Source: Selaginella moellendorffii
Taxonomy: Eukaryota > Plantae > Lycopodiophyta
Reading direction: 5' to 3'
DNA length: 64,000 nucleotides
Assembly (NCBI RefSeq): GCF_000143415.4
Contig: NW_003314288.1
Coordinates: 930,735-994,734 of the forward strand
Positions 18,400 through 58,973 of this stretch are shown here, one piece after another; positions within the stretch are counted from its first letter, which is position 1, and every line of letters begins with the position of its first letter. The notes beneath the pieces were generated by a model. It had not been told where the DNA came from. It saw only the letters and a list, made by a program, of their open reading frames with translations, and ran no database searches. Position numbers and translations under genes: made by a program.

Positions 18400-18710
18400 T
18401 CGGGATTTCTAGGAAGTTCGTGTTGTTAGTAATAATAATAATAATCATAAAAACCTGACGCATGCATACCCTAGAAATCCCGATTTGTTATTACTTAACT
18501 GTAGTAGTAAAAAGCTCGTGTTTTCTGTTTTTTCTTTTTCTAATTCTTTTCCTTTTTAAACTTTACAATGTCACAGTACATGCATAATTTTCAGACAATC
18601 TTCTAACTGGCTGAACATCTAGGGTTTGTGTGGTGTGTGTGTATCTCAACAATCTCATGCAGTGGAAAACGTTTTTCAGGGATCCCACTTTCTGGTGGGA
18701 CAACAGGTTG
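18400..18710 (+). pseudogene. 5' fragment of a third PDF-PPR gene copy, with its promoter/ATG segment locally inverted
   Basis: 18620-18709 encodes GFVWCVYLNNLMQWKTFFRDPTFWWDNR. About 18458-18619 is the reverse complement of the 49144-49392 upstream region, including the ATG. Confidence 0.8.
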
Positions 18711-20877: not shown

Positions 20878-21904
20878 AACCCATTACAACCCAGGATGAA
20901 AACTCCATATCAAAGCTTAAGGCAGCATCACTTGTGATTGCCTTCATCTTGCTTTACAAACTGAAGTTATCAAGGTTCGTGATTGGATAATGCTTGATGG
21001 TGTTGAGACTCAAATCATCTTTGTTATGGAAAAAACCCCATCTCAAGGTATTGTTTTCTATCCCCATAACAGTGGTGCACTGTTTCCATGTATAGTTCCC
21101 GAGGAGGTCCCAGTTCCCAGGATGGCCTTTGGTAAAAGGATCAGGACAATACATCAGAGAGGGAAATACACTGAACTGGATCCTAAGGTTCAACTGGGAG
21201 AATGCTCTGCAATACACTAGTTTGGGGAGTACCTATATCTGATCTTATATAGGATCCAGTTCAGTTATCCTGGAAAGGTAATGAGTTCAGTGTGTCTTTT
21301 TTTATGTACAGGTCTAAGCATGGCAGAGAGCCGCAGGACAGCATCCCTGTTGGTGATTGGCTCACAGTTCACAAAACTCTGTATTCTATGCAAGGAAAAT
21401 CCTTGGAGATGCTTGAACACCTCTTCACATGCAAGTCGTCACGAATAGATCTACCTGTTTCTTCTCCTTGCTCAGCATTGAATGGATCTCCATCCCAATG
21501 CGTAGAGCTCTCTCCCTCTTCTCGCGGACGAGAGTCATTTGCGAAAGTGTTCTGCATGAAACTGGTGCCCTGAGGCTTCTGGCCGTGTTGCCCCACGAAG
21601 TGTTAGTAATAATAATAATAATCATAGAAACCTTGAAAATTATGCATGTACTGATTCTTCAGCTCTTGAGCAACTGATTGCTGCTGGCTCACTTTCTATA
21701 ATATCAAAGAGAATTTTTTTTAACAATAAACATCTAAGCTGCTGCAGTTAAGCTGTGACATTGTAAAGTTTTAAAAGAAAATGAATTTGAAAAAGAAAAA
21801 ACAGAAAACACGAGCTTTTTACTACTACAGTTAAGTAATAACAAATTGGGATTTCTAGGGTATGCGTGCGGCGCTAGGGTTTGTGTGGTGTGTGTGACAA
21901 TCTC

Positions 21905-23590
21905 ATGGAGTTCAGGGATCCCACTTTCTGGTGGGACAACAGGTACAAGAAGAAAAACAAGTTCTTCTCAGAGTCCTACCCGGATTTCAAACATGTTTCT
22001 ACCGGAGAGAGCCTGTGGATCGCCAACAGGAAAACACCAACCTTGGTCTCTGCAACACTCGAGTCGCTCGCTGACCCAGCTATAGGTAAGGCCACCACGG
22101 CCCGCTACAAATCTCCACATACCCCACCTGTAGCTGGTGATGAACCGGTGAGTTTAGGGACGCTGATACACCGCGTGAGAGACTCAGCTGAGAGCAGATC
22201 CCTTTCTTTGGGAAAACAAGCCCATGAAGCTGTGCTCAAGAGTGATGAGCACAAAAGCAACATCTACTTGTTGACGGGATTGATCGATATGTACTGCAAG
22301 TGTGGCGAGCTTGAGGAGGCTCGCAAGATTTTCGACTCCATGGGAACCCGGAGTGTTGTGTCCTACAACGCGATCATCCAGGGCTGCGGCTCGAACGGGC
22401 AACCTGAGCTTGCTCTGGAGTACTACTCTGCCCTGAGAGCTTGTACCACCATTCAACCCAACGATTGGACACATGTCGCGGTGATCAGTGCCTGCTCCAG
22501 ACTTGCTACCGAATCCAGCGAGAAGAGGGAGAGAGCTCTACGCATCGGGATGGAAGTCCATTCAATGCTGAGCAAGGAGAAGAAACAGCTAGATCTGTTC
22601 GTGGCGAATTGCCTGGTAGACATGTACTGCAAGTGTGGCGAGCTTGAGGAGGCTTGCAAGATTTTCCACTCCATGGGAACCCGGAGTGTTGTGTCCTACA
22701 CCGCGATCATCCAGGGCTGCAACACGAACGGGCGAGCTGAACTTGCTCTGGAGTACTACTCTGCCTTGAGAGCTTGTACCACCATTCAACCCAACGATCG
22801 GACTCATCTCGCGGTGATCAGCGCCTGCTCCACACTTGCTACCGAATCCAGCGAGAAGAGGGAGAGAGCTCTACGCATCGGGATGGAGATCCATTCAATG
22901 CTGAGCAAGGAGAAGAAACAGCTAGATCTTTTCGTGGCGAATTGCCTGGTAGACATGTACTGCAAGTGTGGCGAGCTTGAGGAGGCTCGCAAGATTTTCC
23001 ACTCCATGGGAACTCGGAGTGTTGTGTCCTACACCGCGATCATCCAGGGCTGCAACACGAACGGGCGAGCTGAACTTGCTCTGGAGTACTACTCTGCCCT
23101 GAGAGCTGATAACACCATTCAAGCTAATGCTTGCACCTACACCTGCGTCCTTGTTGCTTGCGGGAGTGTGATGGCGATCAAGCTCGGGAGGGAGATTCAC
23201 CAGCTGGCGAAGCATAAAGGGCTGCTGAAAAACGATCCAGTTCTGGGCTCCAGCCTGGTGACCTTCTACGGCAAATGCGGCGATGTTGATTCTGCTCAGG
23301 AAGCGTTTGACGAGTGCCAAGCTCGGGACAACACGGGTCTCTGGAACTCTCTCATACAGGCTTACACTCTCCAGGGCCGATCGATCGAGGCCTTGGAGCG
23401 TTTCTATTCCATGACTCAGGAGGAGGGCTGTAAAGCTGACGATGTGAGTTTTGTCTCGGTGTTGAACGCTTGCAGCCATGGTGGTCTGGTCGGGAAAGGA
23501 AGGCAGCTTCTGGATGAAATGCCCAAGCAGTATGGAGTCAAGCCACGTCTGGAGCATTATGTATGCCTGATCGATATGCTCGGGCGAGCT
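21905..23590 (+). CDS. PDF-motif PLS-PPR protein, paralog A (3 S-P units; 3' end, probably E/DYW, lies in the assembly gap; 5' end lesioned)
   Basis: Near-identical to 49387-52459. The 333-bp unit anchor ATGTACTGCAAG occurs at 22289, 22622 and 22955. The ATG at 21862 runs into TGA after MRAALGFVWCV; the next ATG at 21905 opens MEFRDPTFWWDNR...YPDFKH. Confidence 0.8.
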
Positions 23591-24208
23591 NNNNNNNNNN
23601 NNNNNNNNNNNNNNNNNNNNNNNNNNNNNNNNNNNNNNNNNNNNNNNNNNNNNNNNNNNNNNNNNNNNNNNNNNNNNNNNNNNNNNNNNNNNNNNNNNNN
23701 NNNNNNNNNNNNNNNNNNNNNNNNNNNNNNNNNNNNNNNNNNNNNNNNNNNNNNNNNNNNNNNNNNNNNNNNNNNNNNNNNNNNNNNNNNNNNNNNNNNN
23801 NNNNNNNNNNNNNNNNNNNNNNNNNNNNNNNNNNNNNNNNNNNNNNNNNNNNNNNNNNNNNNNNNNNNNNNNNNNNNNNNNNNNNNNNNNNNNNNNNNNN
23901 NNNNNNNNNNNNNNNNNNNNNNNNNNNNNNNNNNNNNNNNNNNNNNNNNNNNNNNNNNNNNNNNNNNNNNNNNNNNNNNNNNNNNNNNNNNNNNNNNNNN
24001 NNNNNNNNNNNNNNNNNNNNNNNNNNNNNNNNNNNNNNNNNNNNNNNNNNNNNNNNNNNNNNNNNNNNNNNNNNNNNNNNNNNNNNNNNNNNNNNNNNNN
24101 NNNNNNNNNNNNNNNNNNNNNNNNNNNNNNNNNNNNNNNNNNNNNNNNNNNNNNNNNNNNNNNNNNNNNNNNNNNNNNNNNNNNNNNNNNNNNNNNNNNN
24201 NNNNNNNN
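23591..24208. other. Assembly gap (618 N)
   Basis: Run of N. The equivalent interval in paralog B (about 52460-53368) holds the end of S2, E1-E2-DYW and the 3' flank. Confidence 1.
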
Positions 24209-34400: not shown

Positions 34401-36145
34401 CTTTTCATACAGAAGAAGTTGAACATTAGGCAAACTTGTTGGATGGTCAAACTCATGGAGTTTGGGGAGTTTCCTATTGAGCATCATTCCGGAAAATTGA
34501 ATGTGGTGGTAGATGCTTTATCTCGTGTTTGCCATATGATGGCGTTACAAATATGGTTTTGTTATCATTTGAGTAAGGTGGTTAGCGAGTTTGGGTAGTT
34601 GGTTGAGTGTGCTCAAGCGCAAGATTCTTGTTGCAAGGCCCAGATGGAAGCACTTTTCTCATTGGTGGATGGGATTCTTTACTACAATGGCCATGTGTAT
34701 TTGCCATAGATGGATGTGTTAATTACTTAGGTTTTATTTCACTATCATGATCGTCCAGAGGCTAGTCATTTTGGAGGGAAGAAGACATATAAGTTGATTA
34801 AGCATAATTTTTATTGGAGGAATATGAAGGATGATATCCTCGAGTACTATAAGTCATGTGAGCTCTGTCAACAGGTAAAGGTGCCATGGGAGAAGTCGGG
34901 AGGACTTTTGCAACTTCTACCTATTCCTTAAAGTATCTCTATAGACTTCATCATTTGTTTGCCACGAACACAGAGGCAAAAGGAGGAAATATGGGTTATA
35001 GTTAATCGTTTGACGAAGTATGTGCGGTTGTTGGCTCTTCAGAAGAGTGTCACTGCCTTAGACTTGGCTACAGTATACTTGGAGAAAGTTTTTCCTGATT
35101 TTGGTTTGCCGGAAGACATCATTAGCAATCGAGATTCAAAGTTCACTAGTGGATTTTGGAAGAGTTTTGCAAAGGCTATGCAAGTGACTCTGAAACTCTT
35201 GAGTGGAGATCATTCTTAGACGAATGAGTGTGTGAATCAGGTGGTGGAGGATATGCTATGCTATAGCATTGGTCAAAGGCAGGAATAATAAAATCTATAT
35301 CTTCCATTGGTGCAATTTGCCTATAACAATAGCCAACACAGTGGAACCAAGCTAAATCCTTACTTTGCCATGTTTGGAAAGCATCCTTGAATAGTGGTGG
35401 AGTTGAACATTTAAATAAGGATGTTCAAAAAAAGCTTGATTTAGAGGCGATTGATCTGGCCACAAAACTTGATGAAATTCTGGTAGTGTGCAAATGGAAT
35501 TTGTAAGCAACTTAGGACAGAGTAGAGAAGTTTGCTAATGAGCATTGCTAATTCTGGGAATATAAGGTGGGTGATCTTATCTTTGTGCGAATGATCTTTT
35601 TGTCAAGTGAGTAGTGGAACACCTTAGTGCCTTTGTGGAATGGGAAGAGTGATAAATTTTCTCATCGGTATGTTAGTCTATATGAAGTGCTGGAGTGCAT
35701 TGGTAAGGTGGCTTATCAAGTGCGGCTGCCAGCTAGGGTGAAAATTCATCCGATATTTTATGTTAGCTAATTGAAAGGTATACTATCTCGGAATGATAGG
35801 CCCAATGCCTCTTTGATGTATATGGCTATGGAAGATGGATCAAGAGCTTGAGCAGGGTTCTTTAGAAAGGGTGATTACCGGTACAACTCATCCTTGGGAC
35901 AAGGACTTTGTTGGGGGGAAGAATTGTTAGGCACCAGCTTTGACCACATGGTTAATGTCAGTCAAAGGGAGGCTCAAGGGTTTATGAAGGCATGTCAGGA
36001 TAAAAAATTTAACCTACCCTAGGGCTCACAGTGAGAGGAGCTTTTGAGGTAGCTCGGGGGTGGTTAGGTGGTGAGGAACCTCAAGAAGAGGCATAGTCTA
36101 GTCTAGGAAAATTAGATTGTTGACTTTTTGTTCCATGTCATAACA
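31401..36145 (+). mobile_element. Full-length but decayed Ty3/gypsy element; LTRs 31401-31586 and 35925-36145; TSD CAATT
   Basis: CAATT at 31396-31400 and 36146-36150; TG...CA LTR ends; PBS TAGTATCAGAG at about 31588; PPT GGGGGGAAGAA before 35925. Domain order gag, protease LLDSGS, RT (FTKIGLRSGYHQI, FLNDILVFS), RNaseH, integrase; many stops. Confidence 0.92.
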
Positions 36146-36469
36146 CAATTGTTGTTCATGATGTGAGGAATATGATGGATGGGGACATAACATTGGAACT
36201 TGTGCCATGCTAAAAAATATTCTTATGCTCTTTTGACATTTATGGATAATAGCATAACATGCAATATAGAATTAATGGAGGATGAGTAGTTTATATCTGT
36301 TTTTGCTGGAGTCATAAATAGTATAAATGTGATGATCTTGGTGGACTTTGGCTTACCAATTTCCTCTATTCAGTGTTTAATTGTTTGAAGTTTCATTATA
36401 GAAAGTCCCTTGTACTTGACCTTTATGACTTTTTTTTACTAATCATAAGTCATCAGTATAGATATTATG

Positions 36470-37030
36470 TATGGAAACGCTGGTTGTCTACACACAGTGT
36501 GGGCATTTGGAGGAATCAAGAAGGATCTTTGATGCATTGCCGGGCAAGAACATTGCATTGCGGACGGTGCTCGTGAGCGCGTATGCCGAGAGTGGGCATC
36601 TGGCTGAGGCCAAGGCAGCGTTCGATTGAATGGCAGTGCGGGACGTAGTTTCCTCCACTGGGATGGTCAAGGTGCTGGGTGATTGCAGGCAGATTGGATC
36701 GAGCAAGGTGGTGTTTGATGCGATGCCCAAGAGGAACTGCAAGACGTGCTCCGGGGATTTGCTCGCAGTGGAGAGTTTGGGCGAGCGAAAGAGGTGCTGG
36801 ATCGGATGCCCAAGATGAATGTGGTAGCATGAACGATCCTTGTGCAGGGTTTCATACAGTGCAGGCGAGTGGGCGATGTGAAGGCCGCATTTGATTCCAT
36901 GCCCGAGAAGAACAGCATCACTCGCGCGGTGATGTTTGTCGTGTTTGTGGAGAATGGATTCATGGAGGAGGCAGAGGATGTCTTCCTGGAGATTGTCCAC
37001 CGAAACATGATCCTCTGGGGGGTGATATAT
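36470..37030 (+). pseudogene. Truncated PPR pseudogene (inverted duplicate of the 5' part of 57594-58973)
   Basis: METLVVYTQCGHLEESRRIFDALPGKNIA... with frameshifts and stops; matches the reverse complement of about 58410-58973. Confidence 0.85.
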
Positions 37031-37939
37031 GACCTGTTTAGTATTTGCACACACATCAATTTTGTTATATTTATATTCTTTATTTTTCCACAATACCTAT
37101 CTTTTATGGCTTCAGTTAGGTTATAGTCATTTACACCTTTGAGTGTTTCTTCAATTTAGGCACTATATTTTTTGGTTTCCTTAAGCAAACCAGCATAGGA
37201 TATACCTGGGTATTCTTGAATATTCTATAATTTAATTATTGATATTTATTTAGAATAATTTTGTGTTTATAAATTAAAAAACATTTTAATACTGGTCATC
37301 ATGTTGACTATATATAGTTGACCGACGGTTTCGGCAAAAGGATGTTCTAATTTATTTTCAAACCTTTTAAATCTAAGAATTACTAGTTCAATGTTTGGAT
37401 ATATAAATTGCACGGATCCTCGCCTTTAGCATTTCCCAAGTGGACACTAGTCCTTTATTAGCCTCTGTTGTTCTCCACCAAAGCTTAAGATTATCTGCCA
37501 AGTATAGTTTAACACATGGGACCTTCTCTGAACTCAATAATAACAATGCTCAAAAGTAATCCTCCATATCGTAAAATCAATCTTCTACCACTTTATAGTC
37601 ATTCATGTTTGCAAGTGTGATTTTGTGGTGATGAAGCAAGAGCAACAAAAAGTCCTCTAGACAAGTTAACTTCTAGTTTAACCAGCTGCCACCCCTATGC
37701 AATCAAAGGGTAGAGGGCTAGCTCTTGATTTTTTTTGGTTGTTCTCTAGGCTTCAATCTGTTAGGAGTGATGCAAAGAGACTGTTATTGATCAGGCCAGG
37801 GATTTCCAACCCAAAGCTATGTTTCTCATACCTGAAAAGTGTATCCATAAAATATACATATCCTCTTGTAGTTTATCTTCTAAATAGAAGACAAGTGCAT
37901 GAGGTTGTACATATCGAAGTACAAACCAAAGAAGCAGAA

Positions 37940-39900: not shown

Positions 39901-40593
39901 AGATGACATCCTTTGACTATCTCGTTTTGAAGCTTTGGAATGCTCAAGGAGTCTTTTCTAACTCAGCAAAGATGTTGCTTCATATGATGGCCGAGGCTAA
40001 CTATTATCAAACAATTCTATTGATAGAGTTATGCAATCTCATGTGTGAGGCACTACTTTGATGATGTCCTATGACTAAGGAGGAACATGAGATGCATGTG
40101 AGGCAAATGCTGCCACTATTGAGGGAGAATAAGCTGTATTCTAAACTGTCAAAGCGTGAATTCTTCTTGGAGGAGATCACCTATCTCAGACATGTGGTGC
40201 CATGAGATGGTGTGCAGGAAGATCCTCAAAAGACTTAGATAGTCGTTGACAGTGGATTCTGTAAGAGTGTCTGTTGATCGAGGACGTGTGTTCTGGCAGA
40301 GACACATTTATTTTGGCCTGAAATGAAGTCAGGTGTTGATAAGTATGTGCACAGTTGTTAGACCGGCCAGGCAGTCACAATGGATTGTCAGAAGCATGAA
40401 GGTCTCTACCATAGTTAACCTTAGTGGAAGTGGGATAGCATTTTCTATGAGTTTCATAATATGCCCTTCAAGGCAATGATGCTATCTAGGTTGTTGTGGA
40501 TTGTGTGATGATGTTAGCTCACTTCTTCCTTGTGAAGACGAATGCTAAGGCTTTTGACCTTGCTTAGCTGTATTTCTCTATGGGCTTCCTAAG

Positions 40594-43500
40594 TGTTAGG
40601 CGCCAACTTTGACCACGTGGTTAGGGAGGCTTAAGGGTATATTAAGGCATGTTAGGGTAAGGGACTTAACCTACAATGGAGCGGCATAGTGGAGCTTTTG
40701 AGGTAGCTTGGGGGTGGTTGGGTGGTGAGGAACCTCAAGAGGTGGCGTAACATAGTCTAAGGTGACTAGATCTCTGTCTTTTTGTGCCAGATTATAACAT
40801 TGGTATCAGAGGAGTTGGTTGTGATGGATGACCAAGCTGAATGCTGGAATCCTATTGTCGATGGTGGTGCCGACGAAGCTGCGGAGATTTGGACCATTCA
40901 AGATGTGGTTCATGAGCTGTGAGCCCTTATAGCCAATCTTCTTCTCATGGTAAGTTAGATACTAAAAAGTTGCAAACTTTGCAATGTGAGGATGACAAAA
41001 ACAACCATTCCGGTCAGAGGAAGAGACTTTCGATCATTGCTCGTCAGCTCAACTGTGTGTGGAACAAGATGGAGCTCGAGGATATGCGTGAATCAGCTTT
41101 AATGCTGGAGGGCGTGTTTCGTGGCAATCCAGTGTGGATTTTACTGGATAGTGGGAGCGATGACAACTTTGTTTCGGCAAAGTTTGTTATGGAGCATGGC
41201 CTGGTCACACACGGAGTTCTTTCATACACAGTGGAAGGTGCAGCTACCTCTGCTCAGCATTTTGATGCTTGTGTTGAGGGGCTGGAAGTGTTGGTTGGCA
41301 AAACCACACTTGTGGAGACTTTTTATCTCACGGATATCCATTGTGTGGATCTCATTCTTGGGATGCCATGGTTGGTGAAGGTGGATCCAAAGATAAAGTG
41401 GAGAATTAAGCGTATCTCATTGGAGTATGGTGGCGTTAAAGATGTGTGGTTTGGCAAGGGCATTCAACCACCAATTGTTATGCTCTCTGTTACATCTTTG
41501 AAGCAGGCTTGTCATAATGGAAAAGCACTTTCGAGTTACTTGCTGTTTGTTCGTGACTTGGGGGACCAAAGCACGTGTGGGGGAGAAGCAACAGTAAGGG
41601 ATGTACTTGACAAGTTTTCTGATATTTTTCCATCTGAACTTCCTCATGGATTACCTCCGTTATGAGGTGTGGAACATGGGATTATATTGAAGCCGGGGAT
41701 GCGGCCAATTTATCGGCATCCATTTCAGTTAAGTTATGTGGAGGAGCAAGAAGTTCAGTGACAAGTCAAGGAGTTACTTGAGTTTGGATTTATTCAGCCA
41801 AGTAAGTCTTTGTTTGGTGCTTTGGTCTTGCTTGTGAAGAAGGACGGTTTAATGCGAATGTGTATTGACTACCACGCTTTGAACAAAAAGACAATGAAGG
41901 ATAAAATGCCAATGCCACATGTGGATGATATCCTAGACAAGCTTGGTGAAGCACGAGTGTTTACCAAGATTGATTTGAGGAGTGGATATCATCAGATTGC
42001 AATGGATGATGCATCTATCTCCAAGACGGCATTCAACACAAGCTTTGGACATTTTGAGTTTATAGTTATGTCGTTTAGTTTGACGAATGCACCAACCACA
42101 TTTACTTGGTTGATGACAGAGGTATTTGGATGTTATTTTCATGAGTTTATAAAGATTTTCTTGGACGATATTCTTGTTTTTAGCAAGAATATGGAGGAGC
42201 ATAAGGTACATTTGCACAAGGTTCTTTTGTTACTTCGAGACAACAAACTTTATGCAAAAAAGAGCAAATGTGAATTTGCAAAGTTGGAGGTGGAATATCT
42301 AGGCCATATTGTGACATCTAAGGGTGTCAAGATGGATCCAAAGAAGGTGGTTGTGGTGGAAAACTGGCCTACACCGACTACAGTGGCCGAGTTATGCAGT
42401 TTCCTTAGTATGGCTAGTTACTACCGATGTTTCCAACATAAGTTTGCAGAGGTGGCTATTCCTTTGATGCTATTGTTACGCAAGAATGTGCCATTTGAGT
42501 GGAAGAAGCCACAAGAGGAGAGTTTTGTGGCGCTGAAATGATTGTTGAGCAAGACTCCAGTGTTTCGCATTGCTGATCCATTGAAACCTTATGAGGTGAC
42601 ATGTGATGTGAGTGGTTATGCACTAGGAGGAGTTCTCATGCAAGAGGGACAGCCTATTGCATATGAGAGTCAAACTTTGAATTCTGCAAAGCAACAATAT
42701 TCCACATATGAGCAAGAGTTACTCTCTATTGTTCATGCTTTGCGGACGTGGCAGCACTACCTTTATCTTGTAGTGTTTGTAGTGTTGATAGATCACAAAC
42801 CACTTGTGTATATTTTCACATAGAAGGAGTTGAACACTAGGCAAGTTCATTGGATAGTCAAACTCATGGAGTTTGGGGGGTTTCCTATTGAGCATTGTCC
42901 GGGAAAATCAAATGTGGTGGTAGATGCTTTATCTCGTGTTCGTCATATAATGACGTTACAAACATGATTTTGTCATCATTTGAGTAAGGTGGTTAGCGAG
43001 TTTGGGCAGTTGGTTGAGCATGCTCAGGCTTAGGATGTTGAAGTGGCCTCTTTATGAGACTAGATGGAAGCCCCTTTCTCATTGGTGGATGGGATTCTCT
43101 ATTATAATGGCCGTGTATATTTGCCACTGGTGGATGTGTTAATTACTCAAGTTTTATTCAACTATCATGATTGTCTAGAGGCCAGACATTTTGGGGGGAA
43201 AAAGACATATGAGTTGATTAAGTGCAACTTTTATTGGACAAATATGAAGGTTGATATCCTCAAGTATTGTAAATCATGCGAGCTTTGTCAGCGGGTTAAG
43301 GTGCCACAGGAGAAGCCAGGGGGACTTTTGCAACCTTTACCTATTCCTCAGAGCTGTTGGTGTAGTATCTTTATGGACTTGATCATTTGTTTGCCACAAA
43401 CACAGAGGCAAAAGGAGCAAATATGGGTCATAGTGGATCGGTTGACAAAGTATGTGTGGTTGTTAGCTCTTCGAAAGATTGTCACTGCCTCAGACTTGGC

Positions 43501-44591
43501 TGCGGTTTACTTAGAGAAGGTTTTTCCTGATTTTGGTTTGTCGGAAGACATCATTAGTGATCGAGATTCAAAGTTCACCAGTGGATTTTGGAAAAGCTTT
43601 GTAAAGGTTATACAAGTGACTTTGAAACTCTCGAGTGGAGATCATCCTCAGATGGATGGGCAAACCGAGTGTGTGAATCATGTGAGGTATTATATGCTAT
43701 ATTGTAGCATTAGTCAAAGGCAAGGACAGTGGAATTTATATCTTCTATTGGTGCAATTTGCTTACAACAATAGCCAATACAGTGGAACCAAGCTAAGTCT
43801 TTACTTTGCCATATTTGGAAGGCATCTTCAAACAGTGGTGGAGTTGGGATTGCATTTGAATAAGGACATTCAAGATGAGTTTGATTCCGAGACGACTGAT
43901 CTGGCCACAGAACTTGATGAGATTTTGGTGGTGTGCAAACGGAATTTGCAAGTAACTCAAGATAGAGCAGAGAAGTTTGCTAATGAGTATCGCCAATTCC
44001 GGGAATATAAGGTGGGTGATCTCGTCTTTGTGCGGGTGATCTTTCCGTCAAGTGAGCGATGGAACACCTTGGTGCCTTTATGGATAGGGAAGAGTGATAA
44101 ACTTTCCTATCGATATGCTAGTCCATATGAAGTGCTGGAGCGCATTGGTAAAGCGGCTTATCGGGTGCAGCTGCCAGCTGGGGTGAAAATTCATCCAGTA
44201 TTTTATGTCAGCCAATTGAAAGGTGTACTATCTCGGAGTGATGAGCCCAATGCCTCCCTGATGTATACGGCTGTGGAAGATGGACCAGGAGTTTGAGCAA
44301 GGTTCCCTAGAAAGGGTGATCACTGGTACAACTCGTCCTTGGGACAAGGACTTTATTGGGGGGGAAGAATTGTTAGGTGCCAGCTTTGACCACGTGGTCA
44401 ACATCAGTCAAAGGGAGGCTCAAAGGTATATTATGGCATGTTAGGGTAAAGGACTTAACCTACCCTAGGGCTCACAGTGGAGCGGCACTGCAGTGGAACT
44501 TTTGAGGCAACTCAAGGTGAGGAACCTCAAGAGGTGGCATAGCATAGTCTAGAGCAACTAGATCTATGTCTTTTTGCACCAGATCATAACA
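40594..44591 (+). mobile_element. Ty3/gypsy element (same family as 31401-36145) with gag deletion; LTRs 40594-40799 and 44371-44591; TSD CTAAG/TTAAG
   Basis: PBS TGGTATCAGAG at 40801; PPT GGGGGGGAAGAA before 44371; protease LLDSGS, RT FLDDILVFS, integrase H-H-C-C ORF 43064-44296. The empty site (single CTAAG) is at 14302-14306 in the paralogous segment. Confidence 0.95.
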
Positions 44592-45494
44592 TTAAGGATG
44601 TTGTAAGTGACCGGGATCCCACGTTCACTTTGGTGTTTTGGCAGACAATGTTCCAGAAGCTTGAGACAAAGCTAAGCATCAGCATCCACAATCAGATGAA
44701 CAAACAAAATGAGTTAATTAGGTGCTGGAAGACATGCTAAGATTATTGGTCATCTGAAGAGGCAAGGTATTTGGGAGAAGTACCTGCCTTTGTTAGAGTT
44801 TGCCCATAACTATGCCTTCCATTTGGCTATTGAGATGGCTTTGTTTATAGCAATGTATGGCTTTCAACCTTGGTCCCCGGCTGGTATGAACTTGGCTTCT
44901 CTTAAGGTGCACCAGGCAAAGGAGTTGGCTGATGAGCATTGTCAGCACAAGCAGTTTCAGGTTGGAGACAAGGTTTTCCTTCGGTTGTCTGAAGCTCAAT
45001 GAGCTCTTCAAGGTGGAGGTAGTTCTAAGTTCTCGCCATAGTACTGTGGGCCTTGGATTATTCTCAAACGAGTTGGAGACCTTGCCTATCAACTAGACTT
45101 GCCTAGTGGTGTGAAGATTCATCCTGTCTTCTATGTAGGAAGTTGAAGGCATGTTTGCATTCTGGTAATATCTTGGACCAGTCTGCGATCAAGATTTCAG
45201 AGATAGATGTTTGAAGGTTGGCCCTACTTGTGTGTTATAGCAACGGCTAGCGCGCACACATCATAAGACTTGGAGAGAGTTACTTGTTCAATGGAATGGT
45301 TATTCTCCATATGATGCTACATGAGAAGCTGAGGATGATGTTGTTTCCTAATTTTGAGTATGACTTGGATGACATTCCAAAGGAAGAGGAGAAGTAGTCA
45401 CTTGCTCCTATCCTTTTTTTCTTTTCTGACCCCGTTGAGGGCTGGAGGTGTTGTGTCACATGAGACAGTTAGTGGTTTTGTTAGCGGGATGCTT

Positions 45495-49386: not shown

Positions 49387-52300
49387 ATGCGTGCGGCGCT
49401 AAGGTTTGTGTGGTGTGTGTCATTTCTCAACAATCTCATGGAGTGGAAAACGTTTTTCAGGGATCCCACTTTCTGGTGGGACAACAGGTTCAAGAAGAAA
49501 AACAAGTTCTTCTCAGAGTCCTACCCGGATTTCAAACATGTTTCTACCGGAGAGAGCCTGTGGATCGCCAACAGGAAAACACCAACCTGGGTCTCTGCAA
49601 AACTCGAGTCGCTCGCTGACCCAGCTGTAGGTAAGGCCACCACGGCCCGCTACAAATCTCCACATACCCCAGCTGAGGAACCGGTGAGTTTAGGGAGGCT
49701 GATACACCGCGTGAGAGACTCAGCTGAGAGCAGATCCCTTTCTTTGGGAAAACAAGCCCATGAAGCTGTGCTCAAGAGTGATGAGCACAAAAGCAACATC
49801 TACTTGTTGACGGGATTGATCGATATGTACTGCAAGTGTGGCGAGCTTGAGGAGGCTCGCAAGATTTTCGACTCCATGGGAACCCGGAGTGTTGTGTCCT
49901 ACAACGCGATCATCCAGGGCTGCGGCTCGAACGGGCAAGCTGAACTTGCTCTGGAGTACTACTCTGCCCTGAGAGCTTGTACCACCATTCAACCCAACGA
50001 TCGGACACATGTCGCGGTGATCAGCGCCTGCTCCAGACTTGCTACCGAATCCAGCGAGAAGAGGGAGAGAGCTCTACGCATCGGGATGGAGATCCATTCA
50101 ATGCTGAGCAAGGAGAAGAAACAGCTAGATCTGTTCGTGGCGACTTGCCTGGTAGACATGTACTGCAAGTGTGGCGAGCTTGAGGAGGCTCGCAAGATTT
50201 TCCACTCCATGGGAACTCGGAGTGTTGTGTCCTACAACGCGATCATCCACGGCTGCGGCTCGAACGGGCAAGCTGAACTTGCTCTGGAGTACTACTCTGC
50301 CCTGAGAGCTGATAACACCATTCAACCCGACGATTGGACACATGTCGCGGTGATCAGCGCCTGCTCCACACTTGCTACCGAATCCAGTGAGAAGAGGGAG
50401 AGAGCTCTACGCATCGGGATGGAAGTCCATTCAGTACTGAGCAAGGAGAAGAAACATCTAGGTCTGTTCGTGGCGAATTGCCTGGTAGACATGTACTGCA
50501 AGTGTGGCGAGCTTGAGGAGGCTCGCAAGATTTTCCACTCCATGGGAACTCGGAGTGTTGTGTCCTACAACGCGATCATCCAGGGATGTGGCTCGAACGG
50601 GCAAGCTGAACTTGCTCTGGAGTACTACTCTGCCCTGAGAGCTTGTACCACCATTCAACCCAACGATCGGACTCATGTCGCGGTGATCAGCACCTGCTCC
50701 ACACTTGCTACCGAATCCAGGGAGAAGAGGGAGAGAGCTCTACGCATCGGGATGGAGATCCATTCAATGCTGAGCAAGGAGAAGAAACAGCTAGATCTGT
50801 TCGTGGCGAATTGCCTGGTAGACATGTACTGCAAGTGTGGCGAGCTTGAGGAGGCTCGCAAGATTTTCCACTCCATGGGAACTCGGAGTGTTGTGTCCTA
50901 CACCGCAATCATCCAGGGCTGCAACACGAACGGGCGAGCTGAACTTGCTCTGGAGTACTACTCTGCCCTGAGAGCTTGTACCACCATTCAACCCAACGAT
51001 CGGACTCATGTCGCGGTGATCAGCGCCTGCTCCACACTTGCTACCGAATCCAGCGAGAAGAGGGAGAGAGCTCTACGCATCGGGATGGAAGTCCATTCAG
51101 TACTGAGCAAGGAGAAGAAACATCTAGGTCTGTACATGGCGAATTGCCTGGTAGACATGTACTGCAAGTGTGGCGAGCTTGAGGAGGCTCGCAAGATTTT
51201 CCACTCCATGGGAACTCGGAGTGTTGTGTCCTACACCGCAATCATCCAGGGCTGCAACACGAACGGGCGAGCTGAACTTGCTCTGGAGTACTACTCTGCC
51301 CTGAGAGTTGATAACACCATTGAACCCGACGATCGGACTCATGTCGCAGTGATCAGCACCTGCTCCAGACTTGCTACCGAATCCAGCGAGAAGAGGGAGA
51401 GAGCTCTACGCCTCGGGATGGAGATCCATTCAATGCTGAGCAAGGAGAAGAAACAGGTAGATCTGTTCGTGGCGACTTGCCTGGTAGACATGTACTGCAA
51501 GTGTGGCGAGCTTGAGGAGGCTCGCAAGATTTTCCACTCCATGGGAACTCGGAGTGTTGTGTCCTACACCGCGATCATCCAGGGCTGCAACACGAACGGC
51601 CGAGCTGAACTTGCTCTGGAGTACTACTCTGCCCTGAGAGCTGATAACACGATTCAACCCGACGATCAGACTCATGTCGTGGTGATCAGCGCCTGCTCCA
51701 CACTTGCTACCGAATCCAGCGAGAAGAGGGAGAGAGCTCTACGCATCGGGATGGAGATCCATTCAATGCTGAGCAAGGAGAAGAAACAGCTAGATCTGTT
51801 CGTGGCGAATTGCCTGGTAGACATGTACTGCAAGTGTGGGGAGCTTGAGGAGGCTCGCAAGATTTTCAACTCCATGGGAACTCGGAGTGTTGTGTCCTAC
51901 ACTGCGATCATCCAGGGCTGCAACACGAACGGGCGAGCTGAACTTGCTCTGGAGTACTACTCTGCCCTGAGAGCTGATAACACCATTCAAGCTGATGCTT
52001 GCACCTACAGCTGCGTCCTTGTTGCTTGCGGGAGTGTGATGGCGATCAAGCTCGGGAGGGAGATTCACCAGCTGGCGAAGTATAAAGGGCTGCTGAAAAA
52101 CAATCCAGTTCTGGGCTCCAGCCTGGTGAGCTTCTACGGCAAATGCGGCGATGTTGATTCTGCTCAGGAAGCGTTTGACGAGTGCCGAGCTCGGGACGAC
52201 ACGGGTCTCTGGAACTCTCTCATACAGGCTTACACTCTCCAGGGCCGATCGATTGAGGCCTTGGAGCGTTTCTATTCCATGACTCAGGAGGAGGGCTGTA

Positions 52301-53124
52301 AAGCTGACGATGTGAGTTTTGTTTCGGTGTTGAACGCTTGCAGCCATGGTGGTCTGGTCAGGAAAGGAAGGCAGCTTCTGGATGAAATGCCCAAGCAGTA
52401 TGGAGTCAAGCCACGTCTGGAGCATTATGTGTGCCTGATCGATATGCTCGGGCGAGCTAACCTCCTCGACGAAGCTGTGAGAGTTCTCAGAGCCATGCCT
52501 TTTGAACCGGATGCAGTGGTTTGGACGTCCCTGCTCGGAGCCTGCCGGAAGTGGAAGAATTACACGATTGGCAAACTCGCGTTTGAGCGTCTTGTGGAGA
52601 TGGATCCCAAGAGCGGCACGCCCTATGCATTGATGGCCAATATATTTGGAAACGTGGGGATGCTCAGTGAAAGGGCCGCTGTTGTGGAGAGAATGAGAGG
52701 TGAAGGCAGCTTCAGGGAGCCCGGGAGAAGCTGGTGGACGGATGTTAGCTCAGGAAAAGTGCATTCTTTTTCTGTCGGGGATAGGAGTCACTCACAGAGC
52801 GACGAGATTGCGGCCAAGCTCAAGCAATTGTTGCTGAGAATGAAAGAGGAGGGGTACGCGAGCGATGTGATCAACGTTCTAAAAGACATACCCGAGGAAG
52901 ATCACCTGTGCGGCCACAGTGAGAAGCTTGCGCTGGGGTGTGCTCTGGTGAACTCGCACCAGAAGGAGACCATCAGAATCGTGAAAAATCTCCGAGTTTG
53001 TGACGATTGCCATGCGGCCACTGCTCTCATCTCTAAGCTGGAAAAAAGGCTAATCATCTGCAAAGATGCCAGTCGGGTTCATGTGTTCCAGGATGGCAGA
53101 TGTTCCTGTGACAACTACTTTTGA
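49387..53124 (+). CDS. PLS-class PPR RNA-editing factor with N-terminal OSB-type PDF motif and C-terminal E1-E2-DYW (WW subtype) cytidine deaminase
   Basis: Intronless 1245-aa ORF. PDF motif at aa 20-73; about 26 P/L/S motifs ending P2-L2-S2; E1 AVVWTSLLGACR; PGRSWWTD box at 52720; intact HSEKLA and CDDCH zinc ligands; ends GRCSCDNYF. Confidence 0.95.
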   Translation: MRAALRFVWCVSFLNNLMEWKTFFRDPTFWWDNRFKKKNKFFSESYPDFKHVSTGESLWIANRKTPTWVSAKLESLADPAVGKATTARYKSPHTPAEEPVSLGRLIHRVRDSAESRSLSLGKQAHEAVLKSDEHKSNIYLLTGLIDMYCKCGELEEARKIFDSMGTRSVVSYNAIIQGCGSNGQAELALEYYSALRACTTIQPNDRTHVAVISACSRLATESSEKRERALRIGMEIHSMLSKEKKQLDLFVATCLVDMYCKCGELEEARKIFHSMGTRSVVSYNAIIHGCGSNGQAELALEYYSALRADNTIQPDDWTHVAVISACSTLATESSEKRERALRIGMEVHSVLSKEKKHLGLFVANCLVDMYCKCGELEEARKIFHSMGTRSVVSYNAIIQGCGSNGQAELALEYYSALRACTTIQPNDRTHVAVISTCSTLATESREKRERALRIGMEIHSMLSKEKKQLDLFVANCLVDMYCKCGELEEARKIFHSMGTRSVVSYTAIIQGCNTNGRAELALEYYSALRACTTIQPNDRTHVAVISACSTLATESSEKRERALRIGMEVHSVLSKEKKHLGLYMANCLVDMYCKCGELEEARKIFHSMGTRSVVSYTAIIQGCNTNGRAELALEYYSALRVDNTIEPDDRTHVAVISTCSRLATESSEKRERALRLGMEIHSMLSKEKKQVDLFVATCLVDMYCKCGELEEARKIFHSMGTRSVVSYTAIIQGCNTNGRAELALEYYSALRADNTIQPDDQTHVVVISACSTLATESSEKRERALRIGMEIHSMLSKEKKQLDLFVANCLVDMYCKCGELEEARKIFNSMGTRSVVSYTAIIQGCNTNGRAELALEYYSALRADNTIQADACTYSCVLVACGSVMAIKLGREIHQLAKYKGLLKNNPVLGSSLVSFYGKCGDVDSAQEAFDECRARDDTGLWNSLIQAYTLQGRSIEALERFYSMTQEEGCKADDVSFVSVLNACSHGGLVRKGRQLLDEMPKQYGVKPRLEHYVCLIDMLGRANLLDEAVRVLRAMPFEPDAVVWTSLLGACRKWKNYTIGKLAFERLVEMDPKSGTPYALMANIFGNVGMLSERAAVVERMRGEGSFREPGRSWWTDVSSGKVHSFSVGDRSHSQSDEIAAKLKQLLLRMKEEGYASDVINVLKDIPEEDHLCGHSEKLALGCALVNSHQKETIRIVKNLRVCDDCHAATALISKLEKRLIICKDASRVHVFQDGRCSCDNYF
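49798..51990 (+). repeat. 333-bp tandem repeat (S-P-L triplet, 111 aa), 6 full units plus a final S-P
   Basis: ATGTACTGCAAGTGTGG at 49825, 50158, 50491, 50824, 51157, 51490 and 51823, an exact 333-bp period. Confidence 0.97.
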
Positions 53125-54742
53125 AAACATGTCAGTGCTCTTTCTTGCAGTTATCCCTGGTTTTAAACCCTCCGTGAGTCAAGCAGAAACATGGGCTGCT
53201 GAGTGAGCATGCCTCATCAAAGTACTGCCGCCAACCTGAACTTCACGGAGAAAAAACTTAACATTTAGAAGTTAAAACTATGCAAAAGAACGATGACACG
53301 TTGTCTTAAATTTAAATTTCTTTTTGCTAGCAGAATCGGGGAATGCTGACTAAATCTGCCAACAGGTGCCCCAAAACGGAGCGCCCAGATTCAGATAATA
53401 AGCCTTAGTATGAAGACTTGCAAGTACCCAAACTCTTTGCTGATAGCAAGTACTGCCTCATGTTCCGGGAGCAAGGTGATGGCGGCTTGCGGCATGACCA
53501 ACTTTGGGTTTGTGCTCCTAGAGCACGTTGAAGACGTGTGGAAGCTGGTGACGAGCGACGTACTCACCAGTTCCTCGGCAACGTCTTCCTTCCAGATTTT
53601 TTGAGCTTGTCGTGAGTGGTGACCTGCTTGCTCTCTCCTGTGACGACTTCTTCCAGCCTCTGGTGCCCAACCTCAAGGCTCTCTTGTGGATGGAGCTAGC
53701 CCTACACAGTGTGTGTGTGTGTATCAACCAGCAGATGCACAAATCGTTGAGAATTAGCAACAACTGTGTATCATAGGCTTAGTAGTGTACATGTACATGT
53801 GTTTCAGCTAAATATAATGGGCCAAATACACCGAAGAAGTGTGTATAAGAAGAGTAGAAACAAATTAAGAAATGTAAATTAAGAAGTGCAAAAGAAATGA
53901 AAATAAAAATTGTCCAGCCTCATCAGTTTGCTGAAATTAAGTTGGATTCAATTCTTCCAGCTCCAAATATTGTGTGATTGAGTTGTAAGTTAATTAATAG
54001 TAGAAAATAAGAAAAAAAACAAAGTGTTTGATAATATCTTCTTTGCTTTTAGTTTTTTATTTTCTAGTGGGGGAGTGCTGGTAAAAATATCTTTGCCGTT
54101 CATTGGTGGTTAATTAAATGAGCATGTTTAGAGATGTTTATAAGATGGACCAAGAGTTACCCGAAAATTAAAGTTCAAAATTTACGTTTTCCCTATTTGC
54201 ACAATAACTTAAGCTAAAGTAATGTACTTACCCTTATTTTTTATGTGAAAATTATTAGTATCTACGAAAAAAAAGGGAGGATTCTTAAGTAATTTTCAAA
54301 AACCCCGAACAAATCTAAAGTGTTGGGGTCAATAATTCCGGAAATATTCGAGAAGATCCTTAGGTTATCGCGGCACGTAATCCGATTTTAGGGTTGGAAA
54401 AGGAAACAGAGCTCTGGGAAATGGGGCCTGCTCGTGACCAACAGGAGGAGGAAGAGGTGCCCATGGTGGCCATGGGGAGGAGGGCGCGGGGTGGCCGGGG
54501 TTGGCCGCGGATCTCTGAATCTGGCCCCGGGAGGATTAGGCCATGGTTCTGAGGCGGCTCGAGGAGGGGGTGCCCCGGGAGGAGGAGGCCATGGTTCTAC
54601 TCTAGGAGGAGGACGCCGCGGTTCTTCTCCGGGAGGAGGCCATGGATCATCGCCAGGAGGAGGCCAAGCCTCGGTGGGAGGAGCCGAAGCCACAGCGGGA
54701 GGAGTCCAAGCCGCGCCCGGAGGAGCCCAAGCCACGTCCGGA

Positions 54743-55459
54743 GGAGTCGATCCAATTCGCAACATCAACAGGTACTTGATGTCTGGAGAGAGTGCTGGAA
54801 CCGACTGGCTCCCTCCGGAGTGCGATATCTCCATCAGGCCCGGTTGGTTTTGGCACAGGAACGAGGCTCCAAAGTCCCTGGAGCAGCTGCTCGACGTTTT
54901 CTACAAATCATCCGCCAGGAACTGCTTGCTCCTGCTCAACGTCCCTCCAAACTCGTCGGGACTGATCGACGAATCCCACTTCCAGACGCTGGAGCGGTTT
55001 AGCTCCGCCATAGATTCCATCTTCAGCGTCAACTTAGCAGCGAATCCTTTGTCCGTGACAGCAAGCAGCGTTCGCAGCTCTTCGTTCGGGCCGAAGTAAA
55101 TCCTTGACGAGTGTATGGAAACTTTCTGGGCTCCAATGCAAGGGGAGTCGACCGGCTGGATCGAGCTTGATCTTGGCAAGGTCTCAAAGTTCAACGCACT
55201 GGAGATCCGAGAGCCAGTAAACATGGGACAAAGGGTCATGGAATATCACGTCGAGGCATGGGACAGCGAGCTGGGCTGGTACCTGGTGAGCAACGGTAGC
55301 ACCATTGGTTACAGGAAAGTGGATCGACTGGAAGAGGATCAAGAATGCGCTGCTCGGCTCGTTCGACTGCTGATTGACGCGTCGCGGGGAGATCCATTGA
55401 TCTGCTTTTTTCGTTTGTACTTCGATATGTACAACCTCAGGCACTTGTCTTCTATTTAG
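54743..55459 (+). pseudogene. Alpha-L-fucosidase (GH29, plant FUC1-like) C-terminal half with F5/8-type domain; one in-frame stop
   Basis: DWLPPECDISIRPGWFWH...KSLEQLLDVFYKS..RNCLLLLNVPPNSSGLI; TAA at 55097-55099; the same frame continues FWAP...EIREPVNMGQRV...GSTIGYRKV. The N-terminal catalytic half is absent. Confidence 0.88.
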
Positions 55460-57593: not shown

Positions 57594-58973
57594 TCAAGTC
57601 TGAACTGCTCTGAAGATGTTCTCCAGCATCACATAAGGCAATGCATCACTCACAAGGCTGGACTGGCACGTAAATTCCGCAGCATGCATCCCTCGATTCA
57701 TCTCCCCGTGGTTTTTACACGCGGTAACAAACGTTGCCGATGCAACTCCATCAGCTGGCAAAGGCATATTCTCCAGGACATCCTCGGCCTCTTCCAATCG
57801 CCCTAGCCGTCCTAGAGCATCAACAATGCAGGTGTAGTGGTCTTGCGAAGGGTCCAATCCATTGTCAAAGCTCATTGCCGTGAAGTAGCTTGCTTCCTTG
57901 ACGAGCCCCAGATGGCTACACGCCGTCAAAACGATGGCAAACGCTACCTTGTTGGGATCAAAGCCGTGAAGAAACATCACCCACAAGAGCTGGATCGCAG
58001 AATACGCATGGCCGGTCTGGGCATATGCTGCTAGCATCGTGTTCCAGGAGACCAAATTCCAAGTTGGTATTCTATCAAACGTCTTCTTCGCTTCACAAAT
58101 ATTTGCATCTAAAGCGTATACCACGAGAATTGTGTTCCATGAATAGGAATCCCAGCAGCAACACAAAGAAAACGCTCGTATAGCGTCTTTGAAACAACCT
58201 CTCTGGGCATAAACAGCGATTATCGAGTTCCATGAAACAAGATCTCTGTGTGGCATTGCTTCAAACAATTGTTTTCCTTGATTAGCGTCACCGTTTTGCG
58301 CGTATGACTTGATCATAATCCTCCACGAAAGTATGCTGTGCAGAGGCATCCTATCAAACAAACTCTTGGCTTGAATCAAATCCCCATTTTCGGCATAGCA
58401 GCAGTGCATCGCCCCCCAGAGGATCGCGTTTTGGTGTACAATCTCCTGGAAGACATCCTCCGCCTCCTCCACGAATCCATTCTCCGCAAACATGACGAGC
58501 ATCACCGCGTGAGTGATGCTGTTCTTCTTGGGCATGGAATCAAACGGGGCCTTCGCATCACCCCCTCGCCCGCGCTGCGCGAAACCCTGCACGAGGATCG
58601 TCCACACTACCACATTCGTCTCGGGCATCCGATCCAGCACCTCTCTCGCTCGCCCAATCTCTCCGCCACGAGCAAATCCCTGCAGCAGTGTCGCCCACGT
58701 CTTGCAGTTCCTCTCGGGCATCGCATCAAACACCGCCTTGCTCGATCCAATCCGCCCGCAATCGCCCAGCGCCTTGACCATCGCAGTGGAGGAAACTACG
58801 TCCTGCACCGCCATTCGATCGAACGCTGCCTTGGCCTCGCCCGGATGCCCACTCTCGGCATACGCGGTCGCGAGTGCCGTCCACGACGCGATGTTCTTGG
58901 CTGGCAATGCATCAAAGATCCTTCTCAATTCCTCCAAATGCCCACACCGCGCGTAGGCAACCAGTGTTTCCAT
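57594..58973 (-). CDS. PLS-class PPR protein rich in tandem short (S/SS) motifs, ending P2-L2-S2-E1 with a partial E2; no DYW
   Basis: 459-aa ORF of 31-aa motifs (e.g. VVSSTAMVKALGDCGRIGSSKAVFDAMPERN), then LTACSHLGLV, HYTCIVDALGRLGRLEEAE, and a degenerate E1. May be a young pseudogene. Confidence 0.8.
   Translation of the reverse strand: METLVAYARCGHLEELRRIFDALPAKNIASWTALATAYAESGHPGEAKAAFDRMAVQDVVSSTAMVKALGDCGRIGSSKAVFDAMPERNCKTWATLLQGFARGGEIGRAREVLDRMPETNVVVWTILVQGFAQRGRGGDAKAPFDSMPKKNSITHAVMLVMFAENGFVEEAEDVFQEIVHQNAILWGAMHCCYAENGDLIQAKSLFDRMPLHSILSWRIMIKSYAQNGDANQGKQLFEAMPHRDLVSWNSIIAVYAQRGCFKDAIRAFSLCCCWDSYSWNTILVVYALDANICEAKKTFDRIPTWNLVSWNTMLAAYAQTGHAYSAIQLLWVMFLHGFDPNKVAFAIVLTACSHLGLVKEASYFTAMSFDNGLDPSQDHYTCIVDALGRLGRLEEAEDVLENMPLPADGVASATFVTACKNHGEMNRGMHAAEFTCQSSLVSDALPYVMLENIFRAVQT

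What the first reader, a model, noticed from the sequence alone, without database searches (positions are those of the whole stretch)
49444..49605. ssDNA-binding PDF motif fused to a PPR-DYW cytidine deaminase
Seen: aa 20-73 read WKTFFRDPTFWWDNRFKKKNKFFSESYPDFKHVSTGESLWIANRKTPTWVSAKL, in frame with about 26 PPR motifs and a DYW domain that has intact HxE and CxxC. Established: W..FF..P..WWDNR..K...PDFKH..TGE.LW....P.WV is the PDF motif of plant organellar OSB proteins, where it mediates ssDNA binding. PLS-DYW proteins are site-specific C-to-U editors and normally carry only a transit peptide upstream of the PPRs. I know of no described PDF-PPR-DYW architecture but cannot search. Inference: an editor tethered to nucleoid ssDNA or R-loops for co-transcriptional editing, or, more speculatively, a sequence-programmed ssDNA cytidine deaminase acting on organellar DNA. 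The motif occurs in three local copies (18650, 21905, 49444), so this is a family feature.
Basis: partly seen in the sequence, partly recalled or inferred. Interest (0 to 1): 0.9.

Follow-up and report, generated by a model that had tools for sequence, protein, structure and literature searches.

The report
RNA editor carrying a DNA-binding module
This spikemoss gene for a plant RNA-editing enzyme really does begin with a small single-stranded-DNA-binding module borrowed from organelle genome-maintenance proteins; the pairing recurs in ferns and peat mosses, I found no paper describing it, and its function is untested.

Summary
Confirmed. Window 49387-53124 (Selaginella moellendorffii) is one intronless 1245-codon ORF: OSB-type PDF domain (aa 19-74; 49.7 bits against named OSB motifs, shuffles at most 11.4), 26 PLS motifs, E1/E2 and a DYW:PG deaminase with all zinc ligands. 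The two other local copies are damaged products of a segmental duplication and are not independent evidence. The architecture is nevertheless old and selected: PDF-PPR(-DYW) genes occur in a second Selaginella family, Adiantum, 25 peat-moss-type loci and three ESM Atlas clusters, with a homologous junction, dN/dS about 0.19, and an intron shared with OSB-type genes. Peat-moss-type members have organellar presequences; the transcribed Selaginella paralog appears to have none. The window copy lacks three DYW residues and is not shown to be expressed. Paralogs shuffle near-identical 333-nt PPR triplets, changing their predicted targets. Best reading: a C-to-U RNA editor with a built-in single-strand-binding anchor. 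Nothing supports DNA editing. No paper found; this scan noted the same architecture on other pieces of this genome.

The parts
49387..53124 (+). Intronless ORF, 1245 aa, PDF-PLS-E1-E2-DYW. The real start may be the second ATG (49438), directly before the PDF domain.
   Evidence: the first ATG is in frame in only some paralogs
49441..49608 (+). OSB-type PDF domain (aa 19-74)
   Evidence: AF2 model pLDDT 92; Atlas TM 0.86 to an OSB cluster
49609..49797 (+). Linker with a degenerate first P motif, then the first L motif
   Evidence: aligns with the P1-L1 motifs that follow PDF in peat-moss-type and fern-type proteins
49798..51996 (+). Seven S-P(-long L) units of 111 aa / 333 nt, 90-96% identical in DNA; P-motif code pairs NN, ND, NN, TN, TD, TD, TD
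51997..52512 (+). L1-S1-P2-L2-S2 motifs
52513..52716 (+). E1 and E2 motifs
52717..53124 (+). DYW:PG cytidine deaminase domain: PG box, HSE (52915), CDDC (52999), second-zinc ligands present; 3-residue deletion at about 52899; ends NYF
21881..23590 (+). Duplicated paralog: PDF partly deleted, three triplets, runs into an N gap (23591-24208) before E/DYW
18619..18709 (+). Remnant: first third of the PDF domain, cut at an inversion breakpoint

Best explanation
The gene belongs to an old lineage of PLS-E(-DYW) C-to-U RNA editing factors of seed-free land plants that captured the PDF domain from an OSB-type gene. The PPR array reads a single-stranded RNA by the PPR code and the DYW:PG domain deaminates a cytidine 3' of it (established for the family, not shown for this protein). 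The PDF domain caps the N-terminal end of the solenoid, which lies at the 5' side of the bound RNA, and acts as a sequence-independent single-strand anchor: it grips upstream RNA or the ssDNA of transcribed nucleoid regions and raises occupancy on the target (inferred). In S. moellendorffii one subfamily was recently multiplied by segmental duplication and diversifies its targets by gain, loss and exchange of near-identical 333-nt triplets. The window copy is one such young duplicate and may be weakened or silent.
For: Shown: one ORF with all domains; PDF homology; the same architecture in a second Selaginella family (P0100), Adiantum (P0102), a fern-like transcript with 3 PDFs (P0026), 25 peat-moss-type loci of which 4 reach a DYW domain, and three Atlas PPR clusters of 127, 63 and 57 members (TM 0.79-0.88). 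Homologous PDF-P-L-S junction across lineages. dN/dS about 0.19 for fused PDFs. Phase-0 intron after WWDxRxxK shared by OSB-type genes and the P0100 and P0102 genes. Presequence-like extensions of 22-114 aa on 24 of 25 peat-moss-type ORFs. AF2 model of PDF plus four PPR motifs confident through the linker (pLDDT 93.5, pTM 0.79). Contigs of three probable RNA runs join PDF to the first PPR motifs and cover the coding region but not the upstream flank. Literature: PDF is sufficient for ssDNA binding in OSB1 (PMC6963530); PPR-DYW proteins alone edit RNA (PMC6397227).
Against: No binding, editing or localisation data exist for any fused PDF. OSBs prefer ssDNA to RNA (PMC4166229), so RNA anchoring is an extrapolation. 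The transcribed paralog has an in-frame stop five codons before an ATG only 11 residues ahead of the PDF tryptophan, so no presequence is evident; P0100 also starts at the PDF with upstream stops in the genomic frame. All laid contigs carry two 9-nt insertions that the window copy lacks, so this copy is not shown to be expressed. No organellar target could be tested.
Confidence: 0.55

Rival explanations
1. This Selaginella subfamily works outside organelles. With no presequence it stays in the cytosol or nucleus and edits or binds nuclear, transposon or viral RNA, and triplet shuffling generates new specificities.
For: In-frame stop just upstream of the PDF in contigs of three probable RNA runs; first ATG out of frame or lost in several paralogs; P0100 and P0102 models also start at the PDF; all four P-motif code pairs reshuffled among 9 copies.
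Against: Contigs cannot show the true 5' end or rare spliced leaders, and 'RNA' is the tool's guess. Peat-moss-type homologs carry presequences. The code residues vary as linked blocks with non-code neighbours, as expected from plain repeat recombination. Extreme organellar editing in Selaginella already explains PPR expansion (PMC4174432 abstract; 3,861 PPR genes, PMC13386178).
Confidence: 0.15
2. In the fusion, PDF is a structural N-terminal cap or a protein-contact module (for example for dimer formation or for E-DYW complementation) and no longer binds nucleic acid.
For: Short ordered linker and confident joint model; PDF present on PPR-E proteins lacking DYW (P0100, P0026); purifying selection does not say what is being selected.
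Against: The aromatic and basic residues invariant in OSB PDFs are all kept; some fusions carry 2-3 tandem PDFs as OSBs do (P0102, P0026), which a single cap would not need.
Confidence: 0.15
3. The window copy itself is a decaying duplicate with little or no activity (compatible with the best explanation at family level).
For: 3-residue deletion next to HSE; not matched by the laid contigs at two diagnostic indels; several sister copies are frameshifted or truncated.
Against: A 3.7-kb ORF is fully open; all zinc ligands and the catalytic Glu are present; L003 shares the deletion with an open ORF; contigs drop rare variants.
Confidence: 0.4
4. The protein is a sequence-programmed ssDNA cytidine deaminase acting on organellar or other DNA.
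For: PDF binds ssDNA; designer PPRs can read ssDNA with lower affinity (PMC13041630); the bacterial DYW-family relative SsdA deaminates ssDNA (PMC11789416).
Against: The DYW domain is of ordinary plant PG type; PDF is at the far end from the deaminase; many PDF-PPRs lack DYW; no paper found showing DNA deamination by a plant PPR-DYW; targeted DNA mutagenesis by a multi-copy gene would be costly (inference).
Confidence: 0.04

Closest known systems
PLS-class PPR-DYW:PG C-to-U editing factors (PPR65, PPR56, OTP86; Pfam PF14432, PF20431)
   Same: PLS array, P2-L2-S2, E1, E2, PG box, HxE and CxxC, second zinc site
   Different: N-terminal PDF domain; no evident presequence in this subfamily; seven near-identical triplets with 44-aa long L motifs; EKE deletion and NYF ending
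Organellar ssDNA-binding proteins OSB1-4 (Zaegel et al. 2006, as cited in PMC6963530; survey PMC13393729)
   Same: PDF domain: sequence, predicted fold, and in related fusion genes the same intron position
   Different: No OB-fold/SSB domain; PDF is N-terminal and single; linked to a PPR array and a deaminase
PPR proteins fused to accessory editing domains (RRM-PPR, MORF-P, RanBP2-ZnF-PPR; PMC13386178)
   Same: An accessory nucleic-acid-binding or helper domain joined in cis to a PPR protein
   Different: PDF is not among the domains that survey reports (0 occurrences); its known ligand is ssDNA
SsdA and APOBEC-type ssDNA cytidine deaminases
   Same: Deaminase superfamily; SsdA is classed with the DYW clade
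   Different: No evidence of DNA activity here; plant-type PG box, gating region and PPR guide

Membership tests
PLS-DYW editing factor | PLS-type PPR array ending in P2-L2-S2 | tested here: met
   (26 motifs)
PLS-DYW editing factor | E1 and E2 motifs and PG box | tested here: met
PLS-DYW editing factor | DYW domain with HxE, CxxC and second-zinc ligands | tested here: met
   PF14432 94.8 bits; alignment to 7o4e, 7w86, 9kfx
PLS-DYW editing factor | Undamaged segment before HxE and terminal D-Y/F-W | tested here: inconclusive
   3-residue deletion in this copy; the subfamily ends NYF; loss of the terminal W abolished editing in PPR65, effect of F unknown
PLS-DYW editing factor | Organellar targeting peptide | tested here: inconclusive
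   17-19 residues before PDF in the window, about 11 in the transcribed paralog; present in peat-moss-type homologs; no predictor available
PLS-DYW editing factor | Site-specific C-to-U activity on an organellar RNA | not testable with these tools
   no organellar sequences or assay available
PDF domain | About 50-aa motif with W..L/F...P..WWD.R..K...PDFK.K...LW...P.WV | tested here: met
PDF domain | ssDNA binding | not testable with these tools
   shown for OSB1 only (PMC6963530)
OSB protein | OB-fold/SSB-like domain upstream of C-terminal PDF motif(s) | tested here: not met
   no PF00436 in the window protein; it is not an OSB
DYW:KP (U-to-C) editors | KP-type DYW with altered catalytic motif | tested here: not met
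   PG box and HSE present; the KP definition is from my own knowledge and abstracts

The most novel reading that the evidence does not exclude
The presequence-less Selaginella subfamily is an extra-organellar, rapidly re-programmed cytidine deaminase system: PDF anchors it on single-stranded nucleic acid and shuffling of near-identical PPR triplets creates new target specificities, possibly against transposon or viral nucleic acid, with ssDNA as a possible substrate.
Probability: 0.1. Interest if true: 0.92.

Novelty: new variant of a known kind. Interest (0 to 1): 0.56.

Why it matters
Seed-free plants edit hundreds to thousands of organellar sites without the MORF helpers of seed plants, and how their PPR editors gain affinity or reach transcripts is open. 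A conserved, unannotated single-strand-binding module on many of their PLS proteins (it has no Pfam model, so surveys miss it) gives a direct test: delete or transplant PDF in the E. coli editing assay. It would also be the first physical link between organellar genome-maintenance proteins and RNA editing, and a candidate affinity module for designer PPR editors. The subfamily's near-identical, reshuffled triplets are a natural experiment in how new editing specificities arise.

Tried and rejected
Exact look-up of the 1245-aa protein: not on record; RefSeq models of paralogs splice out the repeat block, but no such joint was seen in the contigs. Word-indexed homolog searches with the PDF region found only Selaginella paralogs (low sensitivity). 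No solved structure by sequence or fold (best Z 2.8); BFVD gave nothing; PHROGs gave nothing convincing. The Atlas feature hit to mycobacteriophage gp49 (0.81) is below the reliable range and was not adopted. Bacterial genome scan: one 536-nt contig that looks like an algal contaminant. The PDF tree (73 rows, 63 columns) is poorly resolved: one origin of the fusion is neither rejected (p-AU 0.36) nor shown. Chance match rejected. Misassembly rejected: the junction lies within single contigs of three other runs and in paralogs on three scaffolds. The three local copies rejected as independent evidence. Zaegel 2006 was not readable and is cited through reviews.

Full report
Observation. The window holds a stop-free ORF at 49387-53124 (+), 1245 aa. 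Residues 20-73 are as quoted. Pfam finds PPR, E, E+ and DYW models but nothing on the N-terminus. Near-identical paralogs are RefSeq proteins of Selaginella moellendorffii. I parse 26 PLS motifs: one L, seven S-P pairs separated by six 44-aa long L motifs, then L1-S1-P2-L2-S2, followed by E1, E2 and a PG-type DYW domain.

Is it a PDF domain? An unindexed search with the 63-aa segment returned 482 proteins at E below 0.001. 40 of 103 scanned hits carry the SSB domain, and those with names include OSB2, OSB3 and OSB4. A profile made from 7 PDF units of four named OSBs scores the segment 49.7 bits in the protein, and 57.4 bits as an isolated segment against at most 11.4 for 2000 shuffles; those OSBs were first found with the query, so this test is not fully independent. 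16 of 17 well-conserved columns are kept. AlphaFold2 gives a confident small alpha/beta domain (pLDDT 92) with no solved relative and TM 0.86 to an OSB cluster in the ESM Atlas.

Local copies. Self-comparison shows a segmental duplication (about 12-26 kb versus 39-55 kb) with inversions. The 18650 copy is 92 nt of the 5' end cut at an inversion breakpoint. The 21905 copy has lost WKTFF and runs into an assembly gap. They are not independent evidence. Six fetched loci on three scaffolds add further copies about 95% identical, with 2 to 7 triplets; three (L002, L003, L004) have complete ORFs, and others are frameshifted or truncated.

Distribution. The architecture is not confined to this subfamily. 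It occurs in a second Selaginella family (P0100, PDF-PPR-E), in Adiantum (P0102, two PDFs) and in a fern-like transcript (P0026, three PDFs). A metagenome scan gave 25 loci with PDF and PLS repeats in one ORF; their PDFs are 59-77% identical to a Sphagnum protein fragment and one neighbouring locus is 92% identical, so I take them as peat-moss DNA (inference). Four reach a DYW domain and three end in canonical DYW. The Atlas fold search hits three PPR clusters of 127, 63 and 57 members. In all lineages the PDF is followed in register by P-L-S motifs, the P being degenerate in Selaginella. Fused PDFs have dN/dS about 0.19 (50 non-independent pairs). A phase-0 intron after WWDxRxxK is shared by three OSB-type genomic loci (PDF at the C-terminal end, no PPR) and by the P0100 and P0102 genes; the window gene lacks it. 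This points to capture of PDF exons from an OSB-type gene, with later intron loss (inference). The PDF tree groups the window with P0100 (100/89) but cannot decide between one and several fusions.

Expression. In three probable RNA runs, contigs cover 49413 to about 53300, not the upstream 1.1 kb, and one contig per run spans the PDF and the first PPR motifs; no joint supports the intron that RefSeq models draw through the repeats. The repeats break the contigs, so no single PDF-to-DYW molecule is shown, and the RNA label is the tool's guess. All these contigs carry 9-nt insertions at 49673 and 52899 and a different sequence before 49413, so they come from a paralog or another haplotype, not demonstrably from this copy. 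Read in frame, that upstream sequence has a stop five codons before an ATG that lies 11 residues ahead of the PDF tryptophan. The transcribed paralog therefore has no room for a presequence unless an unseen leader is spliced on. By contrast, 24 of 25 peat-moss-type ORFs have 22-114 residues, mostly rich in Arg/Ser and poor in acidic residues, before the PDF.

Catalytic domain. Both zinc sites and the catalytic Glu align with OTP86, DYW1 and a synthetic PPR-DYW structure, but the window copy (and L003) lacks three residues just before HSE, and the whole subfamily ends in NYF. In PPR65, mutation of the terminal Trp abolished editing (PMC6397227); the effect of Phe there is unknown. Activity of this copy is thus uncertain.

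PPR array. The 333-nt units are 90-96% identical within the gene. Across nine copies the P-motif code pairs switch among NN, ND, TN and TD and the S-motif position 5 between T and N, so each paralog predicts a different target. The code residues travel in linked blocks with non-code neighbours, which fits repeat recombination and does not by itself show selection for new targets. No organellar sequence was available to test targets.

Mechanism. Established for the family: PPR-DYW proteins alone perform site-specific C-to-U editing (PMC6397227); the OSB1 PDF suffices for ssDNA binding (PMC6963530) and OSBs prefer ssDNA to RNA (PMC4166229); OSB1 limits R-loops (PMC8330923). Shown here: a conserved, selected fusion, and a model of a peat-moss-type member in which PDF, linker and the first PPR motifs are all confidently ordered (pLDDT 93.5, pTM 0.79). 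Inferred: PDF caps the 5'-reading end of the solenoid and anchors it non-specifically on single-stranded nucleic acid, either upstream RNA or nucleoid ssDNA (0.55). Rivals: an extra-organellar role for this subfamily (0.15), a purely structural or protein-contact role of PDF (0.15), DNA deamination (0.04). Separately, there is about a 0.4 chance that this particular copy is non-functional.

Comparison with what is known. It works like a PLS-DYW:PG editor and meets the sequence criteria, with targeting and the DYW details inconclusive. It is not an OSB (no OB fold). Full-text searches found no paper combining PDF with PPR/DYW; a 2026 OSB survey kept only proteins with both PDF and OB fold and never mentions PPR (PMC13393729), and a 2026 survey of editing-factor fusions never mentions PDF (PMC13386178). 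Most subscription papers are outside the library, so absence is not proven. Earlier AI notes of this scan report the same architecture on other pieces of this genome; I used them as leads only.

Verdict. Real, old, apparently undescribed domain architecture; new variant of a known kind; function untested. Interest 0.56.

Noticed in passing
L008:186-2709; L012:805-2692; L009-L011, L013: Phage contigs encode 184-270 aa proteins ending in a truncated PDF-like motif; in L008 the gene lies between genes that read like a PD-(D/E)XK nuclease and a DnaB-type helicase, in L012 directly before the helicase (identities read from the sequences, not scanned). The Atlas also gives phage clusters at TM 0.68-0.69 and a Rad52-family cluster at 0.50. 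PDF is therefore not plant-specific and may come from a phage replication module.
   Followed up: partly
P0009, P0010 (Effrenium, Cladocopium); P0004, P0005: Dinoflagellate proteins made almost wholly of 5-11 tandem PDF domains behind a signal-peptide-like N-terminus.
   Followed up: partly
window 49798-51996 and L001-L006: RefSeq models of this subfamily splice the whole 333-nt repeat block out as an intron although the frame is open and no joint is seen in contigs: probably mis-annotated, which hides most of the PPR array.
   Followed up: yes
PMC4166229 Table 1: A 2014 survey lists no OSB for S. moellendorffii; if true, PDF would survive in this species only on PPR proteins.
   Followed up: no
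window 40591-44593 and 32555-36145: Decayed Gypsy-type LTR retrotransposon copies (protease, RT, integrase with C-terminal SH3-like domain) inside the duplicated segments.
   Followed up: partly
window 57594-58973 (-), with an inverted partial copy at 36253-37938: Unrelated PLS-type PPR ORF of 459 aa without PDF, E or DYW match.
   Followed up: no
window 1-9374: Large inverted duplications (1-2279 vs 4240-6519; 2987-4243 vs 8074-9374) with a degenerate tandem repeat near 7825-8383.
   Followed up: no
window 54434-55099: ORF with a weak alpha-L-fucosidase match (E 3e-5), probably an exon of a neighbouring gene.
   Followed up: no
   Followed up: partly
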